A stretch of 63,987 nt of DNA, filler included, from Octopus bimaculoides (taxonomy: Eukaryota): the NCBI RefSeq assembly GCF_001194135.2. It is 6 parts of 6 records of this genome, joined end to end, with 100 filler letters (N's around TTAATTAATTAA, not from the genome) between each part and the next. Parts side by side here need not be neighbours in the genome. Positions count along the whole stretch, not along the records: positions 7,897 to 25,629 come from NC_069007.1; 5 more parts are not named here. One strand, 5' to 3'. A program made the position numbers and the translations under genes. Positions 9,415-25,422 of the stretch are shown here, one piece after another. Each line of letters starts with the position of its first letter. Position 1 is the first letter of the stretch. The notes under the pieces are model-generated. The model did no database searches. It was not told the DNA's origin and saw only the letters and a list, made by a program, of their open reading frames with translations.

Positions 9415-10536
9415 ATGGAAGATGTAAGCGAGAAAGACGATGGTGAGAAACAACATTTATCCAGTGAAACATTTACTAAACAAACATCATTAAACAAAAA
9501 TATTACTGATTATTGATGTGAGATTTGTGCGAAAAGATTTTCTTCGAAACACGAAGTCTTCACTCACAAACGAATACACAGAAGAGGAAAAGCCTATCAC
9601 TGCGAGACTTGTGGGAAATCATTTGTGTCTGGCAGTAAATTAACAATTCATAAAAGAACACACACTGGAGAAAAACCATTCCATTGTGAAGTATGTAGGA
9701 AATGTTTTGTCTCTAATGGTGATTTAAACAGACACAGAAGAATACATAAACGGGAGAAACTATTCGACTGCGAAGTATGTGGGAAGTGTTTTGTCTCCAA
9801 AAGATATCTAACGAGTCATAGAATAATACATTCTGGAGAAAAACGGCATCTTTGTCAAATATGCGGCAAATCGTTCTTTTGTAATTCAAAACTTGTTGTC
9901 CACGAAAGGACACATACCGGAGAAAAACCTTACCGTTGTGAGATATGTGGGAAATATTTTATTAGTAATGGTTATTTAGCATGTCACAAAAGAGTACACA
10001 CTGGAGAAAAGCTTCATTATTGTGAAATCTGTGGTAAATCTTACATTAATAATTCTAGTCTTGTTATCCACGTACGTAGTCATACTGGAGAAAAACCTTT
10101 CCACTGCAAATTCTGTGGAAGATCTTTCGTTTCTAACACTAATTTAGCAACACACAAGATAATCCACACTGGGCAGAAACTGTTCCACTGTGAAATATGT
10201 GGAAAGTCTTTTAATTATAATTCAAAACTTGTGATCCACCAAAGGATCCATACCGGAGAAAAACCATTCCGTTGTGAAGTTTGTGGAAAATCATTTGGAC
10301 ATAAGAGTAATTTAACAACTCATAAAAGAATCCACAATCAAGAAAACCGATTTCCTTGCAAAATCTGTGGAAAATCTTTTATTAATAACATTCATCTTGT
10401 TACGCACATACGTAGTCATACTAGAGAAAAACCATTTCACTGTAACGTATGTGGTAAATCATTTGTAACAAACAGTAACTTAACAAGACATAAATTGATA
10501 CACATTGAAGAGAATTCCCTTAATTCTAAAATATAA
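9415..10536 (+). pseudogene. C2H2 zinc-finger gene (12 fingers) with one premature TGA at 9514-9516
   Basis: ATG 9415 gives MEDVSEKDDGEKQHLSSET...NITDY*CEICAKRF; the frame then stays open to TAA 10536 with 12 CxxC-12-HxxxH fingers and TGEKP linkers. No in-frame ATG follows the stop; the track start at 9625 is GTG. Confidence 0.8.
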
Positions 10537-10637
10537 CAAATCCCATTTTGTAAATTGTCATCATTTAAAGTCCATTTTTCCTTGCTGCCCTTCCTTTCAC
10601 GGACTCTCACCCGTTTCCAAGAAAATGATATTTCCCT

Positions 10638-10800
10638 AGGCGCAGGAGTGGCTGTGTGGTAAGTAGCTTGCTTACCAACCACATGGTTCTGGCTTCAGTC
10701 CCACTGCATGGCACCTTGGGCAAGTGTCTTCTACAATAGCCTCGGGCCGACCAAAGCCTTGTGAGTGGATTTGGTAGACGGAAACTGAAAGAAGCCCATC

Positions 10801-10850
<50 letters not shown>

Positions 10851-10884: not shown

Positions 10885-11506
10885 NNNNNNNNNNNNNNNN
10901 NNNNNNNNNNNNNNNNNNNNNNNNNNNNNNNNNNNNNNNNNNNNNNNNNNNNNNNNNNNNNNNNNNNNNNNNNNNNNNNNNNNNNNNNNNNNNNNNNNNN
11001 NNNNNNNNNNNNNNNNNNNNNNNNNNNNNNNNNNNNNNNNNNNNNNNNNNNNNNNNNNNNNNNNNNNNNNNNNNNNNNNNNNNNNNNNNNNNNNNNNNNN
11101 NNNNNNNNNNNNNNNNNNNNNNNNNNNNNNNNNNNNNNNNNNNNNNNNNNNNNNNNNNNNNNNNNNNNNNNNNNNNNNNNNNNNNNNNNNNNNNNNNNNN
11201 NNNNNNNNNNNNNNNNNNNNNNNNNNNNNNNNNNNNNNNNNNNNNNNNNNNNNNNNNNNNNNNNNNNNNNNNNNNNNNNNNNNNNNNNNNNNNNNNNNNN
11301 NNNNNNNNNNNNNNNNNNNNNNNNNNNNNNNNNNNNNNNNNNNNNNNNNNGTGAAGAATCTGGAGAATAATTGAATGTAAATTCAGTCTACACTTGTAGT
11401 CCTCAGATGAATACAGATGGCAGAAAACTACATCAGTTTGAAATATGTTACAAAATCATTTTCTCCATTATGTTCATGTAATCCATGGGTTTTTCCCATT
11501 ATTACA

Positions 11507-11897
11507 CTTTTACTTGTTTCAGTCATTTGACTGAGGCCATGCTGGAGCACCGCCTTTTTAGTCGAGCAGATCGACCCCAGGACTTATTCTTTGGAAGCCT
11601 AGTACTTATCCTATCGGTCTCTTTTGCCGAACCGCTAAGTTACGGGGACGTAAACACACCACCATCGGTTGTCAAGCGATGCTGGGGGGGACAGACACAG
11701 ACTCACAAACATATACACACACATATATATATACGACAGGCTTCTTTCAGTTTCCGTCTACCAAATCCACTCACAAGGTTTTGGTCGGCCCGAGGCTATA
11801 GTAGAAGACACTTGCCCAAGATGCCACGCAGTGGGAAAGAACCCAGAACCATGTGGTTGGTAAGCAAGCTACTTACCACACAGCCACTCCTACGCCT
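11507..11897 (-). mobile_element. SINE family B, near full length, inverted relative to the 10638 copy
   Basis: About 9 mismatches over about 160 bp against the 10638 copy (hand alignment). Confidence 0.9.
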
Positions 11898-12149
11898 ATT
11901 GATGTAAAATTTGTAGAAAATTATTCATAGTATATGTATAGAGGAGGAAAATATTGGATATGACTTGGAAAACATTTTCTATAAATTGAAATAAAAGTAG
12001 AGCAAAAATCACTGAGAAATTCCTGTAAATTTTTATCTTTGACATTTGAGACAATATTTACATTTATTTATTGATTAAAATCTTAATTTTAAATAAAAAC
12101 ATTTTGGTTAAAATTGATTCACCACTGAAAACATCATTATACGATATTT

Positions 12150-12471: not shown

Positions 12472-12866
12472 GTGGAGGCGCAATGGCCCAGTGGTTAGGG
12501 CAGCGGACTCGCGGTCATTGGATCGTGGTTTCGATTCCCAGACCGGGCGTTGTGAGTGTTTATTGAGCGAAAACACCTAAAAGCTCCACGAGGCTCTGGC
12601 AGGGGATGGTGGCGAACCCTGCTGTACTCTTTCACCACAACTTTCTCTCACTCTTACTTCCTGTTTCTGTTGTGCCTGTAATTCAAAGGGGTCAGCCTTG
12701 TCACACTCTGTGTCACGGTGAATATCCCCGAGAACTACATTAAGGGTACACGTGTCTGTGGAGTGCTCAGCCACTTGCACGTTAATTTCACGAGCAGGCT
12801 GTTCCAGTTGATCGGATCAACTGGAACCCTCGACGTCGTAAGCGACGGAGTGCCAACAACAACAAC
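12472..12866 (+). mobile_element. Full-length tRNA-derived SINE, family C, with 10-bp TSD
   Basis: A box TGGCCCAGTGG, B box GTTTCGATTCC, (CAA)n tail, TSD TCTGTAAGAT at 12462-12471 and 12867-12876, and a 3' hairpin at 12801-12827. Confidence 0.92.
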
Positions 12867-13778: not shown

Positions 13779-14134
13779 TTAAAGAAAGGGACATAAGTGA
13801 TCAGAGAGGAGTGAGTGAAAAGGACTCCTGTGAAAATGACAATACAATCAAACTCCAAAAGAACAGAGATTGCTAGTTTCAACAGAAAAAAAATGAGAGA
13901 CAGCAAATTTGTTGGCTGGGTATCGGAAACTTCATGTCAGTCAGTTGGATGGGATTTTTTTTCGTTGAGGGTATGCAGTGCAGAATGTGTGTAACCCTAA
14001 GCAGGCATTTATTTTTTTTGTAATAGTTTGTCCTGTTTACAAGATTTAATAATGGATTAATAAGACAATTACGGAGATGTACTTGCATAGCACGTGACCT
14101 GATCTGAGATCGTGTGCTGGAACGAAAACAATTG

Positions 14135-14379
14135 CAGCGTGGAAGGTGTTTATAAGCCATTTAAAATAACACACAAAGACCGTTAGATTCACTTCAACAT
14201 TTAGATTTAATTTGTCAAAATATTTTCGTCGCTTTGAGATGCAGCACAAAATTTTGTCAGTGAACAGGTCGCGGTCTCAAAGCGACGAAAATATTTTGGC
14301 AAATTAAATTTAAATGTTGAAGTGAATCTAACGGTTTTTGTGTGTTATTTTAAATGGCTTATAAACACTTTCCACGCTG
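14135..14379. mobile_element. Fold-back MITE (105-bp inverted arms, 35-bp spacer), Tc1/mariner-like ends
   Basis: Arms 14135-14239 and 14275-14379 with 4 mismatches; CAG...CTG ends, TA on the right and TG on the left. Confidence 0.85.
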
Positions 14380-14405
14380 TAATATGACAATGTTTACCAC
14401 AAACA

Positions 14406-15440
14406 TCAGACAGTTATAGCCTCTCTCTCATGCAAACGTTTGTGAGCAAATAAATTACCTTGCTGAGAGAATACTTTGTCACAAATGTCACAGTGATATG
14501 GTTTTTCACCTGTGTGAGTTCGTTTATGGTTCAATAAATATGCATTCCGAGTGAATGCTTTGCCACAGAAATTACAACGATATGGTTTCTTTCCTGTGTG
14601 AATACGTTTATGGCTAGATAAATTACTATTTTGAGAGAAGGCCTTACCACAAATATCACACTGGTATGGTTTTTCCCCTCTGTGAATACGTTGGTGTCTA
14701 GATAGAGACAAACTGGTGGAGAAGATGCTGTCACAGATATCACAGTGGTATGGTCTTTCTCCAGTGTGAATACGTTTATGCTTGGATAAAGAACTTCCAA
14801 CAGAGAATGCATTACCACAGATATCACAGCGGTATGGCTTCTCCCCTGTGTGAATACGAATGTGTTTGGATAAATAATCATTGGCCGAGAAAGATTTACC
14901 ACAAACATCACAACAGTATGGTTTCTCTCCAGTGTGAATACGTTTGTGTTTAGTGAAAGAACTACTGTCAGAGAAAGTTTTTTCACAGATATCACAGTGG
15001 TATGGCTTCTCTCCTGTGTGAATACGTATATGCTTGGTTAAGTGACCACTTATGGAAAATGCTTTACCACAAATATCACAGTGATACGGTTTCTCTCCTG
15101 TGTGAAAACGTACATGGATCAATAAATGACTGTTCTGGGAGAAGGTTTTGCCACAAGTATCACAGTGATGTAGTTTCACTCTTGCGTGAATACGTTTGTG
15201 GTTCAGTAAACATTGATTTGTGGAGAATGTTTTATCGCATACGTCACAAACATAGGGTTCAGAATCAGTATGAAGAGATTTTTTATGTCTAATCAAAGAT
15301 GACCTTATTTGGAAAGACTTTGTACAGATGTCACAGACAAATGACATCTTCTTTGTATCATCCTCACTTTCATGGCAAACATCATTCTTCCCAAGCATAT
15401 TTTTCTTGCGCCTCTGATTCTTAATCTGTGTCTCTTCCAT
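14406..15440 (-). CDS. C2H2 zinc-finger protein, 344 aa, 11 fingers, no effector domain recognised
   Basis: Intact ATG-to-TGA ORF; repeated HCDICGKxFS...L..H.RIH-TGEKPY units after a 34-aa charged leader. Confidence 0.93.
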   Translation of the reverse strand: MEETQIKNQRRKKNMLGKNDVCHESEDDTKKMSFVCDICTKSFQIRSSLIRHKKSLHTDSEPYVCDVCDKTFSTNQCLLNHKRIHARVKLHHCDTCGKTFSQNSHLLIHVRFHTGEKPYHCDICGKAFSISGHLTKHIRIHTGEKPYHCDICEKTFSDSSSFTKHKRIHTGEKPYCCDVCGKSFSANDYLSKHIRIHTGEKPYRCDICGNAFSVGSSLSKHKRIHTGERPYHCDICDSIFSTSLSLSRHQRIHRGEKPYQCDICGKAFSQNSNLSSHKRIHTGKKPYRCNFCGKAFTRNAYLLNHKRTHTGEKPYHCDICDKVFSQQGNLFAHKRLHEREAITV

Positions 15441-15531
15441 AATCTCAAATCTTCTTCAAAACAAAAAAAACTACTTTTTTTTTTTTATAATTTTCAACAG
15501 AGAAATGTTTCTCGAAATAATTCCAATCAAG

Positions 15532-15667
15532 AGCATCCAGCTGTAGAAACTCTGCCAAATTAGATTGGAGCCTGGTGTTGCCATCCGGTTTCACCAGTCC
15601 TCAGTCAAATCGTCCAACCCATGCTAGCATGGAAAGCAGACATTAAACGATGATGATGATGATGATG
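15532..15667 (+). mobile_element. SINE 3' tail fragment ending in (GAT)n
   Basis: GCATCCAGCTGTAGAAACTCTGCCAAAT...CCAACCCATGCTAGCATGGAAAGC is nearly identical to 16366-16506. Confidence 0.8.
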
Positions 15668-16085
15668 AAACACTATGTTTTCTTCGAATGAGATTTTCGT
15701 CAAAGTCAAAAAGGTGTTCCAACTGTAAGGAAACATTTTAAAGATGTTTCGGTAAATCTGATTGTTACACCCATCAGTAAAATCCCAAAGAAGTTGTATA
15801 TGAACAGTCAATGTGAAGAATTAATTGCAACTCCCAAGAAATATGTCGCAGCAACAGAACTGAAGTGATATAAATATAAGATCTTCGATACCATTGGTAA
15901 CACCGTTTCTTAGTCTTCGCTACATCATTTCAATATGATCAGATACCCTGAAATATATAAAGATAAATGATAAAGCACCTGTATCCAAGATGGAGATGAG
16001 TACTAGCGTCTCATTTGGCACGCTTGATAATTGCTGAAAATTCTTGGGCATTAACCAATGGTAGCCTTGTTACCTTACAAATAAA

Positions 16086-16214: not shown

Positions 16215-16506
16215 TTGACAGTGCCGCTGGACTGGCTCTTGTGCGGGCGGCACGTAAAATTCACTATTTTGAGTGTGGCCGTTGCCAGTACCGCCTGACT
16301 GGCCTTCGTGCAGGTGGCACGTAAAAGCACCCACTACACTCTTGGAGTGGTTGGCGTTAGGAAGGGCATCCAGCTGTAGAAACTCTGCCAAATCAGATTG
16401 GAGCCTGGTGTAGCCATCTGGTTTCACCAGTCCTCAGTCAAAGAGCCCAACCCATGCTAGCATGGAAAGCGGACGTTAAACGACAATGATGATGATGATG
16501 ATGATG
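16215..16506 (+). mobile_element. SINE/RTE-related 3' domain with (GAT)n tail
   Basis: TTGGCGTTAGGAAGGGCATCCAGCTGTAGAAAC resembles RTE-derived bipartite SINE modules; a microsatellite tail follows. Confidence 0.7.
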
Positions 16507-17594: not shown

Positions 17595-18590
17595 TCACTT
17601 GTTGTCGTTCTCATCTTCTTTATCATCACCAGATGTTTTTTCTTTGTCACCAGATACTTTTTCTTTGTCGCCAGATACTTTTTCCTTGTCACCAGATGTT
17701 TTTTCTCTGCCACCAACTGCTTTTTCCTTGTCACCAGCTGCTTTTCCTTTGCCACTACTTGCTTTTTTTTTGACAGCAGATGTTTTTACTTTGTTACCAG
17801 ATGTTTTTGCTTTATCACCAGATGCCTTTTCTTTGTCACCAGATATTTTTTCTTTCTCTCCAGATGCTTTTTCTTTGTTTCCAGATACTTTCCCTTTGTC
17901 ACCAGATGTGTTTTCTCTGGAAAAAGATTCCCTTCTTTGACTTTTCCTATGTATCCTCTTTTGTGTTTTAGCGTTCTTCTCTTTACTTACATCCCTCTCC
18001 TCAGCTTTCACCTGTAAACACACGGGCTCATCTTCTATAGAAAGGACTTCACTTCGTGAAGGTTGAGCACATTTTCGTTTCCTCTTGGAATTCTGTGAGG
18101 CTTTTTTGTTTTCCTCAGTTGAGTTAGGAGCAATTGCAGAAAGGTCCTTCTGGGCAGCCTTGGTCAAGATATCTGGTTTGCCAGATGCAAGTTTCTGTGA
18201 CCAACGTCGTTTGAATGTTATCATCCAGTCTTTCCCTGGCATATTATTCTTAAAAACGGTTTTCCTGCCAGCTGTATCTAGATACTTCTTAACCATTGTT
18301 TGAATTTCCTTTGTTCCACAAGCCCAGCCAAAAAGAGATGACGAAAGTAAGAGCGCGTCAATAATATCTTTCTCCTCCGTCATTGAAAGCACACTAACGA
18401 AACGCCCGCTGCCAATTCTTTCAGTTTGATTGAGACCATTAATTCGTCTTCGAAGTGTCTCATATGGGACATTTGTTGCAGCTGCAGCATGTGAGACTGG
18501 TTTGCCTTTAGCTACCATGGCGCGAGCTTTCTTTATAGCTTCTTCACGATCTGCTGGAATGGGTCTCTTCCTGATATATTTACGCACCAT
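17595..18590 (-). CDS. pogo/CENP-B-type DNA-binding protein (HTH_psq + CENP-B HTH) lacking DDE, with Lys-rich 7-aa repeat tail, 331 aa
   Basis: AAAATNVPYETLRRRING (psq-like HTH) and LSMTEEKDII...PGKDWMITFKRRW (CENP-B-like HTH); intact ORF; splice-acceptor-like TTTCTTCTCTTTAACAG one base before the ATG; minus-strand AATAAA at 17447-17442. Confidence 0.8.
   Translation of the reverse strand: MVRKYIRKRPIPADREEAIKKARAMVAKGKPVSHAAAATNVPYETLRRRINGLNQTERIGSGRFVSVLSMTEEKDIIDALLLSSSLFGWACGTKEIQTMVKKYLDTAGRKTVFKNNMPGKDWMITFKRRWSQKLASGKPDILTKAAQKDLSAIAPNSTEENKKASQNSKRKRKCAQPSRSEVLSIEDEPVCLQVKAEERDVSKEKNAKTQKRIHRKSQRRESFSRENTSGDKGKVSGNKEKASGEKEKISGDKEKASGDKAKTSGNKVKTSAVKKKASSGKGKAAGDKEKAVGGREKTSGDKEKVSGDKEKVSGDKEKTSGDDKEDENDNK
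17620..17915 (-). repeat. Coding 21-bp minisatellite (about 13 units of SGDKEKx)
   Basis: Units related to TCACCAGATACTTTTTCTTTG on the + strand, all in frame. Confidence 0.9.
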
Positions 18591-18766: not shown

Positions 18767-18811
18767 AGGCACAGGAGTGGCTGTGTGGTAAGTAGCTTGC
18801 TTACCAATCAC
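18767..18811 (+). mobile_element. SINE family B head (cut by gap)
   Basis: AGGCACAGGAGTGGCTGTGTGGTAAGTAGCTTGCTTACC. Confidence 0.8.
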
Positions 18812-19246
18812 NNNNNNNNNNNNNNNNNNNNNNNNNNNNNNNNNNNNNNNNNNNNNNNNNNNNNNNNNNNNNNNNNNNNNNNNNNNNNNNNNNNNNNNNN
18901 NNNNNNNNNNNNNNNNNNNNNNNNNNNNNNNNNNNNNNNNNNNNNNNNNNNNNNNNNNNNNNNNNNNNNNNNNNNNNNNNNNNNNNNNNNNNNNNNNNNN
19001 NNNNNNNNNNNNNNNNNNNNNNNNNNNNNNNNNNNNNNNNNNNNNNNNNNNNNNNNNNNNNNNNNNNNNNNNNNNNNNNNNNNNNNNNNNNNNNNNNNNN
19101 NNNNNNNNNNNNNNNNNNNNNNNNNNNNNNNNNNNNNNNNNNNNNNNNNNNNNNNNNNNNNNNNNNNNNNNNNNNNNNNNNNNNNNNNNNNNNNNNNNNN
19201 NNNNNNNNNNNNNNNNNNNNNNNNNNNNGAAAAGATCATTTGCTTA

Positions 19247-19604: not shown

Positions 19605-22600
19605 AACGTTGATATAGTTTTTGTAAGGTTGGGAGCAGTCGTAAAAATTATACTTCTCCTCAAAGTTAGGAATGCAGTAAAAACATCTCATCGTGTGCTC
19701 GGATCATGCAACAAAAATTTTGAGTATTTAGGTCAAATTAAAGTGGGGAAAGTGGATATGAAATTAACGAAACTCGACTCAATCGAGAAACTCAACGTAA
19801 AATGTTGTAGCGACTCTCATCTCGACATATTCATGCACCAATTTAATAAGCAATTACTGAAATTAATCGTGACCCATTTTACCCCGCTTCAGACGTAATT
19901 TTTTTGAAAACAGAAAATTATTAAATAAGAAATTAGTGTGGGAAATATTTGACTTGGAATCCAACAGAGAAAAGAATATTGATTATTAAGCACCAAAAAA
20001 TACACAGATATTTTAATTAGCAACCGTAATTATATCAGGTCAAAGTTGAGGGAAAAATTCTTGGAGAAAGGGGTACCTGTCACCTGACTGTTTCGACTTC
20101 AACAACTGTGCTAATATTATATTAGTAACTATTAACATTATAAACAAGGTGAAAGAAGCACTGAAGTATGTTGCATGTTTATGTACACATTCGACAACTT
20201 AAATATATTGTGTATGTGTGTGGATATATACATATATATATATATATATATAAATATATAGTATTATTATACTGTGGAACTTAATTTAATTTTAATTTTT
20301 AATAAATTGATTTTAATTGAGTTTTTACCTGTAATTTTGGATTTTATCCCTAATATTATTATTATATATATATATATATATATATATAATTGTAATGACC
20401 ATTATTTTTGTCTTGTTTTATTATACATATATGTGTATAATTATTTATATATACCACACACACATAGATATACATTTATATATATTATTAAAAGGAACTT
20501 TGTAGTATACGCACCTTGCTAAAAGTGGGACGTAACGTTCATTCGTGATGGAACATTAACAAACAATGTTGTCACTGTCAAAAACAGAAACAAAGATAAA
20601 ATACAGGAACCGGATGTGAGGCCGATATACTGCACGAAAGGAATTCTGGGTNNNNNNNNNNNNNNNNNNNNNNNNNNNNNNNNNNNNNNNNNNNNNNNNN
20701 NNNNNNNNNNNNNNNNNNNNNNNNNNNNNNNNNNNNNNNNNNNNNNNNNNNNNNNNNNNNNNNNNNNNNNNNNNNNNNNNNNNNNNNNNNNNNNNNNNNN
20801 NNNNNNNNNNNNNNNNNNNNNNNNNNNNNNNNNNNNNNNNNNNNNNNNNNNNNNNNNNNNNNNNNNNNNNNNNNNNNNNNNNNNNNNNNNNNNNNNNNNN
20901 NNNNNNNNNNNNNNNNNNNNNNNNNNNNNNNNNNNNNNNNNNNNNNNNNNNNNNNNNNNNNNNNNNNNNNNNNNNNNNNNNNNNNNNNNNNNNNNNNNNN
21001 NNNNNNNNNNNNNNNNNNNNNNNNNNNNNNNNNNNNNNNNNNNNNNNNNNNNNNNNNNNNNNNNNNNNNNNNNNNNNNNNNNNNNNNNNNNNNNNNNNNN
21101 NNNNNNNNNNNNNNNNNNNNNNNNNNNNNNNNNNNNNNNNNNNNNNNNNNNNNNNNNNNNNNNNNNNNNNNNNNNNNNNNNNNNNNNNNNNNNNNNNNNN
21201 NNNNNNNNNNNNNNNNNNNNNNNNNNNNNNNNNNNNNNNNNNNNNNNNNNNNNNNNNNNNNNNNNNNNNNNNNNNNNNNNNNNNNNNNNNNNNNNNNNNN
21301 NNNNNNNNNNNNNNNNNNNNNNNNNNNNAACCATTTATCATCATAAATATACAGGGATTAGCATTGAGTTGCTTCTCCAACATACTGAAAATTTAGAAAT
21401 AGCAGTCAAAGAACTACTGATTCTAAACTACAAATTTTTCTCTAAACGGATGGCGATATTTATGGCACACATAGAACAAAAAACCGGAGGGAAAAGCACA
21501 AACAAAACAAAACTGCCTTTAGTTAATTGGATACAAACGTTTCATGGTTAAGAGAATGAAATTACTCTATTCCGAATCTTCAGCCCAATATTCTGATAAA
21601 TTTGAAAGTGTCTCTAAAAAAATTCACGGTAATTTTTGGCCACGCGACACCAAAAACCAACAATATTATAAATTAACTACCAACAAAAATAATTGGTAAG
21701 CTAACTCAAAAAATCATCACCAAAATAGCAGAAAAAAACGAGTGAAGGTATGCAGACTCTTCAAGAATTGATCCTTTTGGTTATATTAATAATAATAAAG
21801 GAGTTATGCCGCAAAAACGTATATATTCAAATGAACATATTTATCTTCTTCAATATATATTTCAGTATAAAGAACTCATTAAGCGACTTAATAAATCAAA
21901 ATTTCTTTACACATCTTCAGGAAAAATAAATATAACATCAGAAAAACTACATTCGGTTTAAAAATACAAACCGTTCATGGTGAAAAAATTTGCTGTGCTT
22001 AGTCCACTGTTTCACACTAATACGATCACACATTCATAAACATATGTATATATTTACACACACACACATATATATATATATATAATGTTTAAATAATGAG
22101 ACAGACAGAAGATGGAGGATATGAGAATGTTTATTAATCTCTATAATTGTTTCAACCCATCATATGCCATATGATTTATTAACTAATATATATATATATG
22201 CATATTATCATCATCATTTCGTGTCTGTTGTTCATGCGGGCAAGAGTTAGACATATGCATATGTATAAACATAAATACATACATATATATATATATATGC
22301 ATATATACATACATACATATATGTACATACTTACATATATATGTATATACATATGCGTATATGGGCACAGACAACAAAGTTATTTTATTCCACACGGGTA
22401 GTAATATAGGAAAAATTGAAGTTGCAAATGCGCTGAGAATAGTTCAAATATTTTTTATTATCATATTTAAAGCTTTAACCGGTTTCACAGTTTACACTGA
22501 TTTTCAAGAAGTTCAAATTGAAAGACATGGCTTATGTCGCAGCTGTCTGCCCAAGGGCAGACCACAAATGTAATGGATATAAGTTGCTTACTTAAATACC

Positions 22601-23960: not shown

Positions 23961-25202
23961 TCATGTTTCACAGTTGAAAAACAGATTCCCTCCAACGTGC
24001 ATTTGTTTGTGCCTTGTTAAATTACTATTATATGCAAAAGATTTTCCACATACTTGACAGTAGAAAGGTTTGCCTCCAGTATGTATTATTTTATGTGCTG
24101 TTATATAACTACTGGCCAAAAAGGACTTGCCACATATATCACAGTGATAAGGTTTCTCTCCAGTGTGACTTCGTATATGGACAACAAGTTTTGAATTATT
24201 AATAAAGGTTTTCCCACAAAATTCACAGTAATGTAAGTTCTCTCCCGTGTGAATTCTTTTATGAGTTGTTAAATTACTATTATCACGAAAACATTTCCCA
24301 CACAATTCACAGCGATAGGGTTTTACTCCAGCATGTAACCTTTGGTGTTTTGTTAAATCACTGTTAGAGATAAAGGATTTCGCACATATTTCACAGTAGA
24401 AGGGCTTTTCTCCAGTATGGCTCCGCTTATGGATTGCAAGATGGGAATTCTGAGTAAAAGCTTTACCACATATCTCGCAGGGAAACGGTTTCTCTCCACT
24501 GTGTATTCTTTTATGTGTTGTTAAATTACTCTTATCGTGAAAAGACTTACCACATACATCACACTGAAACGGATTTCCTCTGTTGTGTATCTTCATGTGT
24601 GTTTTCAAATTACTACTGTTAACAAAACATTTCCCACATATTTCACAGGGATAAGGTTTTTCTTCTGTATGTGTTGTCTTGTGAACTACAAGATGGGAAT
24701 TCTGTGTAAAACTCTTCCCACATACTTCACAACGAAACGGCTTTTCTCCAGTATGGATTCTTTTATGCCTGGTCAAACAACTGCTAGAGATAAAACATTT
24801 CCCACATATTTCACAATGAAAAGGTTTTTTACCCGTGTGTATAATCTTATGTGCTGTTAAATAACTTTTAATGAAAAATGATTTTCCACATATTTCACAG
24901 TGATATGGTTTCACTCCAGTATGACTTCGTACGTGAATAATAAGTTTTGAATTATTATTAAAAGACTTTCCGCAAGTCTCACACTGAAACGATTTTTTCC
25001 TGTTGTGTATTTGTTTGTGAGCGAAAACTTCGTGTTCGGAAGAATATTTTTTCCCACAAATCTCACAACGATGATCAGTGATATTTCTGTGGGATGATGT
25101 TTCACTGGATAAACCTTGTTTCTTACCATTGTCTTCTTCTCTTACTGAATCCCTATTGTTAACAGCTGGGTTACAAGTCTCGAAGTCATTAACGTCTTCC
25201 AT
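23961..25202 (-). CDS. C2H2 zinc-finger protein, 413 aa from the first ATG, 13 fingers
   Basis: The track start at 25226 is TTG; the first ATG is at 25202 (MEDVNDF...). 13 fingers at 28-aa spacing; paralogue of 9415-10536. Confidence 0.93.
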   Translation of the reverse strand: MEDVNDFETCNPAVNNRDSVREEDNGKKQGLSSETSSHRNITDHRCEICGKKYSSEHEVFAHKQIHNRKKSFQCETCGKSFNNNSKLIIHVRSHTGVKPYHCEICGKSFFIKSYLTAHKIIHTGKKPFHCEICGKCFISSSCLTRHKRIHTGEKPFRCEVCGKSFTQNSHLVVHKTTHTEEKPYPCEICGKCFVNSSNLKTHMKIHNRGNPFQCDVCGKSFHDKSNLTTHKRIHSGEKPFPCEICGKAFTQNSHLAIHKRSHTGEKPFYCEICAKSFISNSDLTKHQRLHAGVKPYRCELCGKCFRDNSNLTTHKRIHTGENLHYCEFCGKTFINNSKLVVHIRSHTGEKPYHCDICGKSFLASSYITAHKIIHTGGKPFYCQVCGKSFAYNSNLTRHKQMHVGGNLFFNCET

Positions 25203-25422
25203 ATCAACTCTCGAAGGATTCTTCAAAAACTGGCAAAATTCCGTAAATACAATCTATTATGGTTCAGCTCCTCGTCTTGGAAATCGTGCGGTTCTAATTA
25301 AATGATTTAATTAGAAACATAACAAGTTCCCGGTGACATCGACAAGTTTTCCTCCGCGTCTAACTCATACCGGTGACACCAATGAAAAATCCCTTACATA
25401 ATATAATACAGTCAGAAACAAT
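25203..25422 (-). promoter_or_regulatory. Upstream/5'UTR region conserved with 9195-9414, including a perfect 25-bp palindrome
   Basis: TTCTAATTAAAT-G-ATTTAATTAGAA at 25292-25316; other shared blocks at 25365-25378 and 25409-25422. Confidence 0.7.

What the first reader, a model, noticed from the sequence alone, without database searches (positions are those of the whole stretch)
14135..14405. 105-bp fold-back hairpin 26 nt past a ZNF stop codon; all four mismatches are A-C on the gene strand
The MITE lies between the TGA (14406) and the first canonical minus-strand AATAAA (14013-14008). The arms differ at four sites, which would be G-U wobbles on the + strand but A-C mismatches in the ZNF mRNA. 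A opposite C is the established preferred ADAR context. A duplex this close could also promote editing of the last fingers, or feed Dicer as a hairpin RNA. Caveats: four of four in one direction can occur by chance (about 1 in 8 to 1 in 16), and an ATTAAA inside the distal arm (about 14204-14209) could truncate the duplex.
Basis: partly seen in the sequence, partly recalled or inferred. Interest (0 to 1): 0.7.

Follow-up and report, generated by a model that had tools for sequence, protein, structure and literature searches.

The report
Fold-back transposon relic behind octopus ZNF gene
A 253-base palindromic, transposon-like element sits just after the stop codon of a zinc-finger gene in the California two-spot octopus; it would fold into a long RNA hairpin that editing enzymes probably attack, but such hairpins are very common in this genome and nothing shows that this one is special.

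Summary
Arms 14135-14239 and 14275-14379 (105 nt; 109 nt with the flanking TG/TA plus AT) pair around a 35-nt loop, 26 nt past the TGA of an intact 11-finger C2H2 ORF. All four mismatches, and a fifth at 14134/14380, are G:T on the + strand and A/C on the gene strand.

The window is Octopus bimaculoides chromosome CM046627.1. The element looks like a whole-length palindromic MITE: non-coding, TIRs starting CAG, and a possible TA duplication. I found no second copy, so family membership is unproven.

The mismatch polarity is not beyond chance (two-sided 1/8 for four sites, 1/16 for five). It equally fits an RNA made from the + strand. It cannot be polarised without a family consensus.

Comparable fold-backs and close inverted pairs are frequent in Octopus zinc-finger loci: at least nine in 122 kb. 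Published work already ranks octopus highest for hyper-editing of long near-perfect duplexes.

If the 3'UTR runs to the AATAAA at 14013-14008, promiscuous ADAR hyper-editing of the 78 stem adenosines is the likely fate. That would not depend on the A:C sites. No transcript, editing or small-RNA data could be reached.

Verdict: real structure, ordinary for this genome, function untested.

The parts
14406..15440 (-). C2H2 zinc-finger ORF, 344 aa, with 11 intact fingers. The stop codon TGA is at 14408-14406.
   Evidence: ORF listing. Pfam zf-C2H2 matches 11 stretches, E = 3.6e-61. All 11 fingers keep the C2H2 pattern. The same 344-aa product is a called gene on CM046627.1.
14386..14417 (-). Vestige of the start of a 12th finger (Y-x-C-D-V-C-G-K). 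It is frame-shifted and carries an in-frame stop. The gene's TGA lies inside it. Zinc-finger homology ends at 14386.
   Evidence: Direct-repeat family D2, 83% identity to the finger unit. nhmmer with a profile of this gene's own finger units, E = 0.002. Many blastn alignments to arrays in L003/L004 start at 14386-14393.
14275..14379 (-). Proximal arm, transcribed first in the ZNF sense. On the gene strand it carries A at 14369, 14336 and 14310, and C at 14299.
14240..14274 (.). 35-nt unique loop. It contains a 12-nt perfect palindrome, ACAAAATTTTGT, at 14246-14257.
14135..14239 (-). Distal arm. On the gene strand it carries C at 14145, 14178 and 14204, and A at 14215. It contains ATTAAA (14211-14206) and TATAAA (14154-14149).
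14133..14134 (.). Left flank TG, read as a mutated copy of a TA target-site duplication. Position 14134 is the fifth G:T site.
   Evidence: Reading of the flanks: TG|CAGCG...CGCTG|TA. This is inference, and weak because only 2 bp are involved.
14380..14381 (.). Right flank TA, the putative target-site duplication.
14008..14013 (-). First canonical AATAAA downstream of the stop, 393 nt past it. This is the likely poly(A) signal and would put the whole hairpin inside the 3'UTR.
   Evidence: Actual use of the signal is inferred, not shown.
14045..14050 (-). Variant ATTAAA hexamer downstream of the hairpin.

Best explanation
The feature is a 245-253-bp whole-length palindromic, non-coding DNA-transposon relic, a fold-back MITE. 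It is probably of the Tc1/mariner-pogo kind: the TIRs begin CAG and a TA target duplication is possible, with one copy now TG.

It lies at the decayed 3' edge of the finger array of an intact 11-finger C2H2 gene, in a zinc-finger cluster on Octopus bimaculoides chromosome CM046627.1 (record positions 18,488,497-18,488,749).

The arms have drifted apart by four or five transitions (K2P 0.04). Taking the neutral rate of 0.0036 per Myr that PMC13282606 takes from Albertin et al. 2015, that is roughly 5 Myr if the arms began identical.

The one-sided polarity of these mismatches is most likely chance.

The following steps are inferred, not shown. If the ZNF mRNA ends at the AATAAA at 14013-14008, the 3'UTR holds a 105-109-bp, 29% GC duplex. 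The ATTAAA inside the distal arm would be base-paired as soon as it is transcribed, so it is probably a poor signal. In octopus tissues such a duplex would be promiscuously hyper-edited by ADAR at many of its 78 stem adenosines. The five A:C sites would be merely among the best targets. Editing would loosen the duplex. Any effect on the ZNF transcript would be a by-product of the insertion rather than a selected function.
For: - Structure and coordinates.
- Organism and locus: the window matches L001 with 0 mismatches, and the assembly accession is O. bimaculoides.
- Non-coding: no ORF longer than 31 aa lies wholly inside the element.
- Ends: TG|CAGCG...CGCTG|TA.
- A real sequence rather than an assembly palindrome: the arms differ at 4-5 sites and the loop is unique.
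- The class is common here. In 122 kb of Octopus ZNF-locus DNA there are at least nine compact fold-backs or close inverted pairs with arms of 68 nt or more at 88% or better. Examples are L003 8191-8363 (TTAA-flanked), L004 12867-13380, L005 4097-4324 and L007 7917-8393.
- Tc1-Mariner has the most TIR families in the O. vulgaris table of recently active repeats, and MITE families are listed there too (PMC13282606).
- Octopus has the highest hyper-editing signal, and palindromic repeats can be edited on their own (PMC5625713). Most editing across metazoans targets repeats that form intramolecular dsRNA (PMC9989829).
- Adenosine counts and neighbour contexts. Poly(A) hexamers.
Against: - No second copy was found in the 17.7-kb piece, in 113 kb of other Octopus DNA, in three sequence collections, or through translated arms against 5.8 billion proteins. 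Mobility and family membership are therefore unproven.
- The putative duplication is only 2 bp, and one copy is mismatched.
- Zinc-finger homology stops 3-5 nt from the element and does not resume beyond it. A clean insertion into a finger would not give this.
- No transcript, 3'-end, editing or small-RNA data could be reached.
- 5 of 5 mismatches with one polarity (p = 1/16) is suggestive enough that chance is not certain.
Confidence: 0.6

Rival explanations
1. The relevant RNA is made from the + strand, antisense to the ZNF. It could be read-through from the convergent + strand ZNF ORF at 9625-10536, or an independent hairpin-RNA or miRNA-like precursor. Under this reading, only substitutions that keep G-U wobble pairing on that strand have been tolerated.
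For: All five mismatches are G:T on the + strand. The + strand RNA therefore folds as an unbroken stem at -187.3 kcal/mol, against -165.2 for the minus strand. The hairpin lies between two convergent ZNF ORFs. Rfam's best sub-threshold hits score slightly higher on the + strand: MIR8562 86.1 vs 75.1 bits, MIR6140 76.3 vs 71.3.
Against: The + strand ORF ends 3.6 kb upstream, with SINE-like repeats and an assembly gap in between. No Rfam family reaches its gathering score. The higher + strand scores simply follow from the G-U pairs. There are no small-RNA data.
Confidence: 0.07
2. The A:C mismatches on the gene strand are non-random. One possibility is selected high-efficiency ADAR sites, where editing to I:C repairs the stem. 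Another is G-to-A changes tolerated because editing restores G (the 'harm-permitting' idea discussed for coleoids). On this view the 3'UTR hairpin is an editing-tuned element or an editing inducer for the last fingers.
For: 5 of 5 mismatches place A opposite C in the ZNF sense. A:C is the preferred ADAR context. Four of the five adenosines have a non-G 5' neighbour. Octopus edits heavily.
Against: The polarity is within chance. The direction of mutation is unknown without a consensus. The five sites are a small minority of the 78 stem adenosines. Two other sampled fold-backs show no such polarity. There is no conservation or expression evidence. The element looks young and neutral.
Confidence: 0.07
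3. The hairpin is never part of a mature mRNA. Either transcripts end at the ATTAAA at 14211-14206, leaving at most about 50 bp of stem, or they end elsewhere, or the ZNF gene is not expressed. The element would then be inert intergenic DNA.
For: An ATTAAA lies inside the distal arm. No near-identical protein fragment of this gene from any transcriptome-derived source turned up. Only the genome record carries the ORF.
Against: The ORF has 11 intact fingers, which argues for a live gene. The ATTAAA would be sequestered in the stem (inference). The first canonical AATAAA is beyond the hairpin. The protein searches listed only hits up to about 1.75 times the query length and were swamped by other zinc-finger proteins, so their silence is weak evidence.
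Confidence: 0.2
4. The feature is not a transposon. It is a one-off local inverted duplication, or an assembly artefact, at a rearrangement breakpoint that truncated the finger array.
For: No second copy was found. Zinc-finger homology ends at the element's edge and does not resume. The contigs are gap-rich.
Against: The arms contain neither zinc-finger nor flank sequence. The arms differ at 4-5 sites and enclose a unique loop, unlike artefactual perfect palindromes. The CAG ends with TA flanks, and the abundance of similar elements nearby, fit MITEs.
Confidence: 0.06

Closest known systems
Palindromic MITEs with TA duplications derived from Tc1/mariner elements, such as human MADE1 (source of the miR-548 hairpins) and plant Stowaway
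   Same: Short, non-coding and almost entirely two long TIRs around a small loop. When transcribed it forms a near-perfect hairpin (PMC1784062). The TIRs start CAG and a TA flank is present.
   Different: This element is 253 bp with 105-nt arms, whereas MADE1 is 80 bp. It shows no sequence similarity to any known family, no second copy was seen, and there is no small-RNA evidence. The left flank reads TG, not TA.
Self-pairing palindromic repeats and inverted repeat pairs that serve as ADAR hyper-editing substrates (frog palindromic Harbinger, human inverted Alu pairs, octopus repeats)
   Same: A long near-perfect intramolecular duplex, probably in a non-coding part of a transcript, in the species with the strongest hyper-editing signal (PMC5625713; PMC526178, listed).
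   Different: Editing of this locus has not been observed. Whether it is transcribed is unknown.
MITE in a 3'UTR acting on its host mRNA (the rice example of translational repression)
   Same: A MITE hairpin in the likely 3'UTR of a regulatory gene (PMC5338036, title and abstract listed).
   Different: That case is in a plant, and I took it from the title and abstract only. Nothing here shows repression.
Rfam long-hairpin plant miRNA precursor families (MIR8562, MIR6140, MIR8675, MIR6297, MIR812)
   Same: The covariance models align end to end because both are very long, AT-rich, near-perfect hairpins.
   Different: All scores are far below gathering (86 vs 211, 76 vs 140, 45 vs 90.8, 44 vs 114). 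Both strands match, and the sequence identity is trivial. This is structural resemblance only.

Membership tests
MITE (Tc1/mariner-type, palindromic) | Short (under about 800 bp) with no coding capacity | tested here: met
   The element is 245-253 bp, and the longest ORF wholly inside it is 31 aa.
MITE (Tc1/mariner-type, palindromic) | Terminal inverted repeats | tested here: met
   105-nt arms with 4 mismatches, with ends CAGCG...CGCTG.
MITE (Tc1/mariner-type, palindromic) | Target-site duplication (TA) | tested here: inconclusive
   TA on the right and TG on the left. With only 2 bp and one mismatch this is weak. An 8-bp hAT-type duplication is not present (3 of 8 identical, read).
MITE (Tc1/mariner-type, palindromic) | Many dispersed copies forming a family | tested here: inconclusive
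   No copy in the piece, in 113 kb of other Octopus DNA, or in the metagenome, viral and prokaryote collections. The translated arms shared no words with the protein database. No whole Octopus genome could be searched with these tools.
MITE (Tc1/mariner-type, palindromic) | Empty site in a paralogue or orthologue, or an autonomous partner with matching TIRs | not testable with these tools
   No close paralogue or orthologue of the ZNF was recovered. The weak HTH_psq ORF at 17595-18590 has no matching TIRs nearby.
ADAR hyper-editing substrate | Intramolecular dsRNA of tens of base pairs | tested here: met
   Predicted stem of 105-109 bp, -165 kcal/mol on the gene strand, z = -24.
ADAR hyper-editing substrate | Both arms present in one transcript in ADAR-expressing tissue | not testable with these tools
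   Only hexamer positions are available. No RNA data could be reached.
ADAR hyper-editing substrate | Clusters of A-to-G differences between RNA and DNA | not testable with these tools
   No reads or transcript contigs are available.
Known miRNA / hairpin RNA family (Rfam) | Score at or above the family's gathering threshold | tested here: not met
   No match at gathering threshold across the whole piece. The best sub-threshold hit is MIR8562, 86.1 bits against 211.
C2H2 zinc-finger gene (host gene) | Tandem C-x2-C-x12-H-x3-4-H fingers with TGEKP-type linkers in an open frame | tested here: met
   11 intact fingers; Pfam zf-C2H2 E = 3.6e-61 and zf-H2C2_2 E = 4.8e-85.

The most novel reading that the evidence does not exclude
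In a heavily editing animal, hairpins inside transcripts might accumulate substitutions preferentially in the direction that puts A opposite C on the sense strand. ADAR rewrites these sites to I:C, so the change is masked at the RNA level. That would leave a genomic footprint of editing in the mismatch polarity of genic fold-backs. This ZNF 3'UTR hairpin, with 5 of 5 sites in that direction, would be one instance.
Probability: 0.05. Interest if true: 0.55.

Novelty: new member of a known kind. Interest (0 to 1): 0.15.

Why it matters
As it stands, little. It is one more fold-back repeat in a genome full of them, next to one of roughly 1,800 octopus zinc-finger genes (gene count from my memory of Albertin et al. 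2015). It belongs to a class of sequence already known to be the main ADAR substrate in animals.

Its modest value is as a clean test locus. It is a single compact hairpin with five defined A:C sites, immediately after a coding region. With it one could ask whether octopus ADARs share the mammalian A:C preference, and whether a 3'UTR duplex induces editing in adjacent codons.

The polarity idea only becomes interesting if it is tested genome-wide.

Tried and rejected
**Looking for other copies**
- blastn of the element against the piece found only itself.
- blastn against L003/L004 (O. bimaculoides) and L005-L007 (O. vulgaris, O. sinensis) gave nothing above chance.
- Exact 21-25-mer scans of metagenome, viral and prokaryote collections gave nothing, apart from two 21-27-nt chance matches in bacterial MAGs that do not extend.
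- A three-frame translation of the arms against 5.8 billion proteins shared no words with any of them.

**Looking for transcripts**
- Exact look-ups of the ORFs that overlap the hairpin (93 aa and 67 aa) are not on record.
- A search with the C-terminal 120 aa of the ZNF, meant to fish out transcript-derived fragments, found nothing above 64% identity.
- The full-length ZNF search was swamped by generic zinc-finger proteins.
- P0043 is not on record.

**Looking for an internal empty site**
- I joined the flanks and searched them with a profile of the gene's own finger units. Homology stops at 14386 and does not resume, so no clean empty site exists.

**Other readings rejected**
- hAT-type 8-bp duplication: 3 of 8 identical.
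- Membership of any Rfam miRNA family: far below gathering, with both strands matching.
- Assembly-artefact palindrome: the arms differ and the loop is unique.

**Literature**
- No paper in the library describes this element or a MITE near octopus ZNF genes.

Full report
**What is in the sequence**

The inverted repeat is real. The arms are 14131-14239 and 14275-14383 (109 nt, 95% complementary) around a 35-nt loop.

All five are G opposite T on the + strand. On the minus strand they are A or C opposite C or A. As RNA, the minus strand folds at -165.2 kcal/mol with five one-base interruptions. The + strand folds at -187.3 kcal/mol as an unbroken stem. Both are more than 24 standard deviations beyond shuffled controls.

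The 344-aa ORF on the minus strand (14406-15440) ends with TGA at 14408-14406, which is 26 nt before the 105-nt core. On the minus strand, ATTAAA lies at 14211-14206 inside the distal arm. TATAAA is at 14154-14149, a second ATTAAA at 14050-14045, and the first AATAAA at 14013-14008.

**Where it comes from**

The exact 344-aa product is a called gene on record CM046627.1 of assembly GCA_001194135.2. The fetched locus matches the window with no mismatch, and the window's internal N runs are the assembly's own gaps. That accession is Octopus bimaculoides. Record coordinate equals window coordinate plus 18,474,366, so the hairpin is at 18,488,497-18,488,749.

The neighbourhood is a zinc-finger cluster, with further C2H2 ORFs at 9625-10536 (+) and 23961-25226 (-). 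The host ORF has 11 intact C2H2 fingers.

**The 3' edge of the gene**

Finger homology does not end at the stop codon. A frame-shifted vestige of the start of a 12th finger (Y-x-C-D-V-C-G-K) runs from about 14417 to 14386, and the TGA lies inside it. Three results show this:
- the direct-repeat family D2;
- a profile of the gene's own finger units (E = 0.002);
- many blastn alignments to arrays elsewhere that begin at 14386-14393.

Homology stops 3-5 nt from the hairpin and does not resume beyond it, whichever boundaries are used to excise the element. The element therefore sits at a breakpoint of the array, not in a cleanly interrupted finger. I cannot explain this without a paralogue or orthologue.

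**What the element is**

It has no coding capacity; the longest internal ORF is 31 aa. It is almost entirely two long terminal inverted repeats. Its ends read TG|CAGCG...CGCTG|TA.

CAG-initial TIRs flanked by TA are the signature of Tc1/mariner-pogo elements and their MITEs (established knowledge). On that reading the fifth mismatch is a mutated copy of the TA duplication. An 8-bp hAT-type duplication is absent.

The arms differ, so this is not an artefactual perfect palindrome.

I found no second copy:
- none in the 17.7-kb piece;
- none in 41 kb more of O. bimaculoides or 72 kb of O. vulgaris and O. sinensis;
- none in the metagenome, viral and prokaryote collections beyond two 21-27-nt chance hits;
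- none through translated arms against the protein database.

No whole octopus genome can be searched with these tools. 'MITE' therefore remains the best label, not a demonstrated one.

**How unusual it is**

It is not unusual. In 122 kb of non-gap Octopus DNA around zinc-finger genes I counted at least nine compact fold-backs or close inverted pairs with arms of 68 nt or more at 88% identity or better. They include:
- a TTAA-flanked 173-bp palindrome (L003 8191-8363);
- a 514-bp element with 145-nt arms at 99% (L004 12867-13380);
- palindromes of 228 and 244 bp (L005 4097-4324 and 23295-23538);
- a pair with perfect 105-nt arms (L007 7917-8393).

None is related in sequence to the present element.

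This agrees with Porath et al. 2017. They found that 4.4e-3 of random octopus loci lie in long near-perfect dsRNA, that octopus has the strongest hyper-editing signal of the species surveyed, and that palindromic repeats can be edited on their own (PMC5625713). In the table of recently active repeats for O. vulgaris, Tc1-Mariner has the most TIR families and MITE families are listed separately (PMC13282606).

**The mismatch polarity**

A transition in a base pair yields G:T or A:C on a given strand with equal probability if mutation is strand-symmetric. The two-sided probability of uniform polarity is therefore 1/8 for four sites and 1/16 for five.

The same data fit two opposite stories: A:C sites in the ZNF mRNA, or tolerated G-U wobbles in a + strand RNA. 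The two other fold-backs I examined in detail have mixed mismatch types. Without a family consensus, the direction of each change cannot be inferred.

I therefore treat the polarity as chance, with a small reserve.

**Likely behaviour (inferred)**

If the mRNA uses the AATAAA at 14013-14008, the 3'UTR is about 410 nt and contains the whole hairpin. The ATTAAA in the distal arm would be paired with the proximal arm as it emerges, so it is probably a poor signal. Even if it is used, about 50 bp of stem would remain.

On the gene strand the two arms hold 78 adenosines, 69 of them without a 5' G. Mammalian ADARs prefer A opposite C (Wong 2001, cited in PMC10244592). A long near-perfect duplex, however, is edited promiscuously, so the five A:C sites are not needed for the hairpin to be a substrate.

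Arm divergence (K2P 0.04), with the neutral rate of 0.0036 per Myr quoted for O. bimaculoides, suggests an age of roughly 5 Myr if the arms began identical.

**Comparison with known things**

The element works like palindromic MITEs such as MADE1, the source of the miR-548 hairpins (PMC1784062). It also works like self-pairing repeats that are ADAR substrates. A MITE in a rice 3'UTR is reported to repress translation of its host mRNA (PMC5338036, title and abstract).

It is not a member of any Rfam family. Nothing reaches gathering over the whole piece. The sub-threshold hits to long plant miRNA hairpins (MIR8562 at 86 bits against 211, MIR6140 at 76 against 140) occur on both strands and reflect structure only.

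**Verdict**

The polarity argument is within chance, and every functional step is untested. This is an ordinary feature for this genome, and interest is low.

Noticed in passing
window 10623-10844 and 11691-11912: An inverted pair of SINE-like repeats (222 nt, 85% complementary) lies 846 nt apart across an assembly gap. It begins about 90 nt after the stop of the convergent + strand ZNF ORF (9625-10536). The neighbouring gene's 3' flank therefore also has dsRNA potential.
   Followed up: partly
window 11853-11897 and 18767-18811: 45-nt inverted arms (93%), cut off by an assembly gap, bracket the whole ZNF gene at a distance of 6.9 kb. They look like further copies of the same abundant repeat family in opposite orientation.
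   Followed up: no
window 17595-18590 (-): A 331-aa ORF, called as a gene in the record. It has a weak N-terminal HTH_psq match (E = 0.0056) and a C-terminal run of SGDKEK-like heptad repeats that spuriously hits an antifreeze beta-roll family. It is possibly a remnant of a pogo/Tigger-type transposase fused to a low-complexity tail.
   Followed up: partly
window 15529-15668 and 16362-16501: A 140-nt direct repeat (92%) lies upstream of the ZNF ORF. The same sequence recurs at up to 98% identity on other chromosomes (L003, L004), so it is an abundant short interspersed repeat.
   Followed up: no
window 12473-12860: A 388-bp stretch is 94% identical to L004 19657-20040, on a different chromosome. 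It is another dispersed repeat, in the region downstream of the ZNF.
   Followed up: no
L003 8191-8363: A 173-bp palindromic element (81-nt arms, 93%, 11-nt loop) is flanked by TTAA on both sides and starts CCC, which is piggyBac-like. Its own flanks are again inverted repeats, suggesting that fold-backs are nested here.
   Followed up: partly
L004 12867-13380; L005 4097-4324 and 23295-23538; L007 7917-8393: Further compact fold-backs occur near Octopus ZNF genes, with arms of 105-145 nt at 95-100% identity. They are unrelated in sequence to the window's element.
   Followed up: partly
window 14246-14257: The loop of the hairpin contains its own perfect 12-nt palindrome, ACAAAATTTTGT.
   Followed up: no
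window 10885-11350, 18812-19228, 20652-21328: Runs of N inside the piece are gaps of the public assembly itself; they are also present in L001. Repeats abutting them are truncated.
   Followed up: yes
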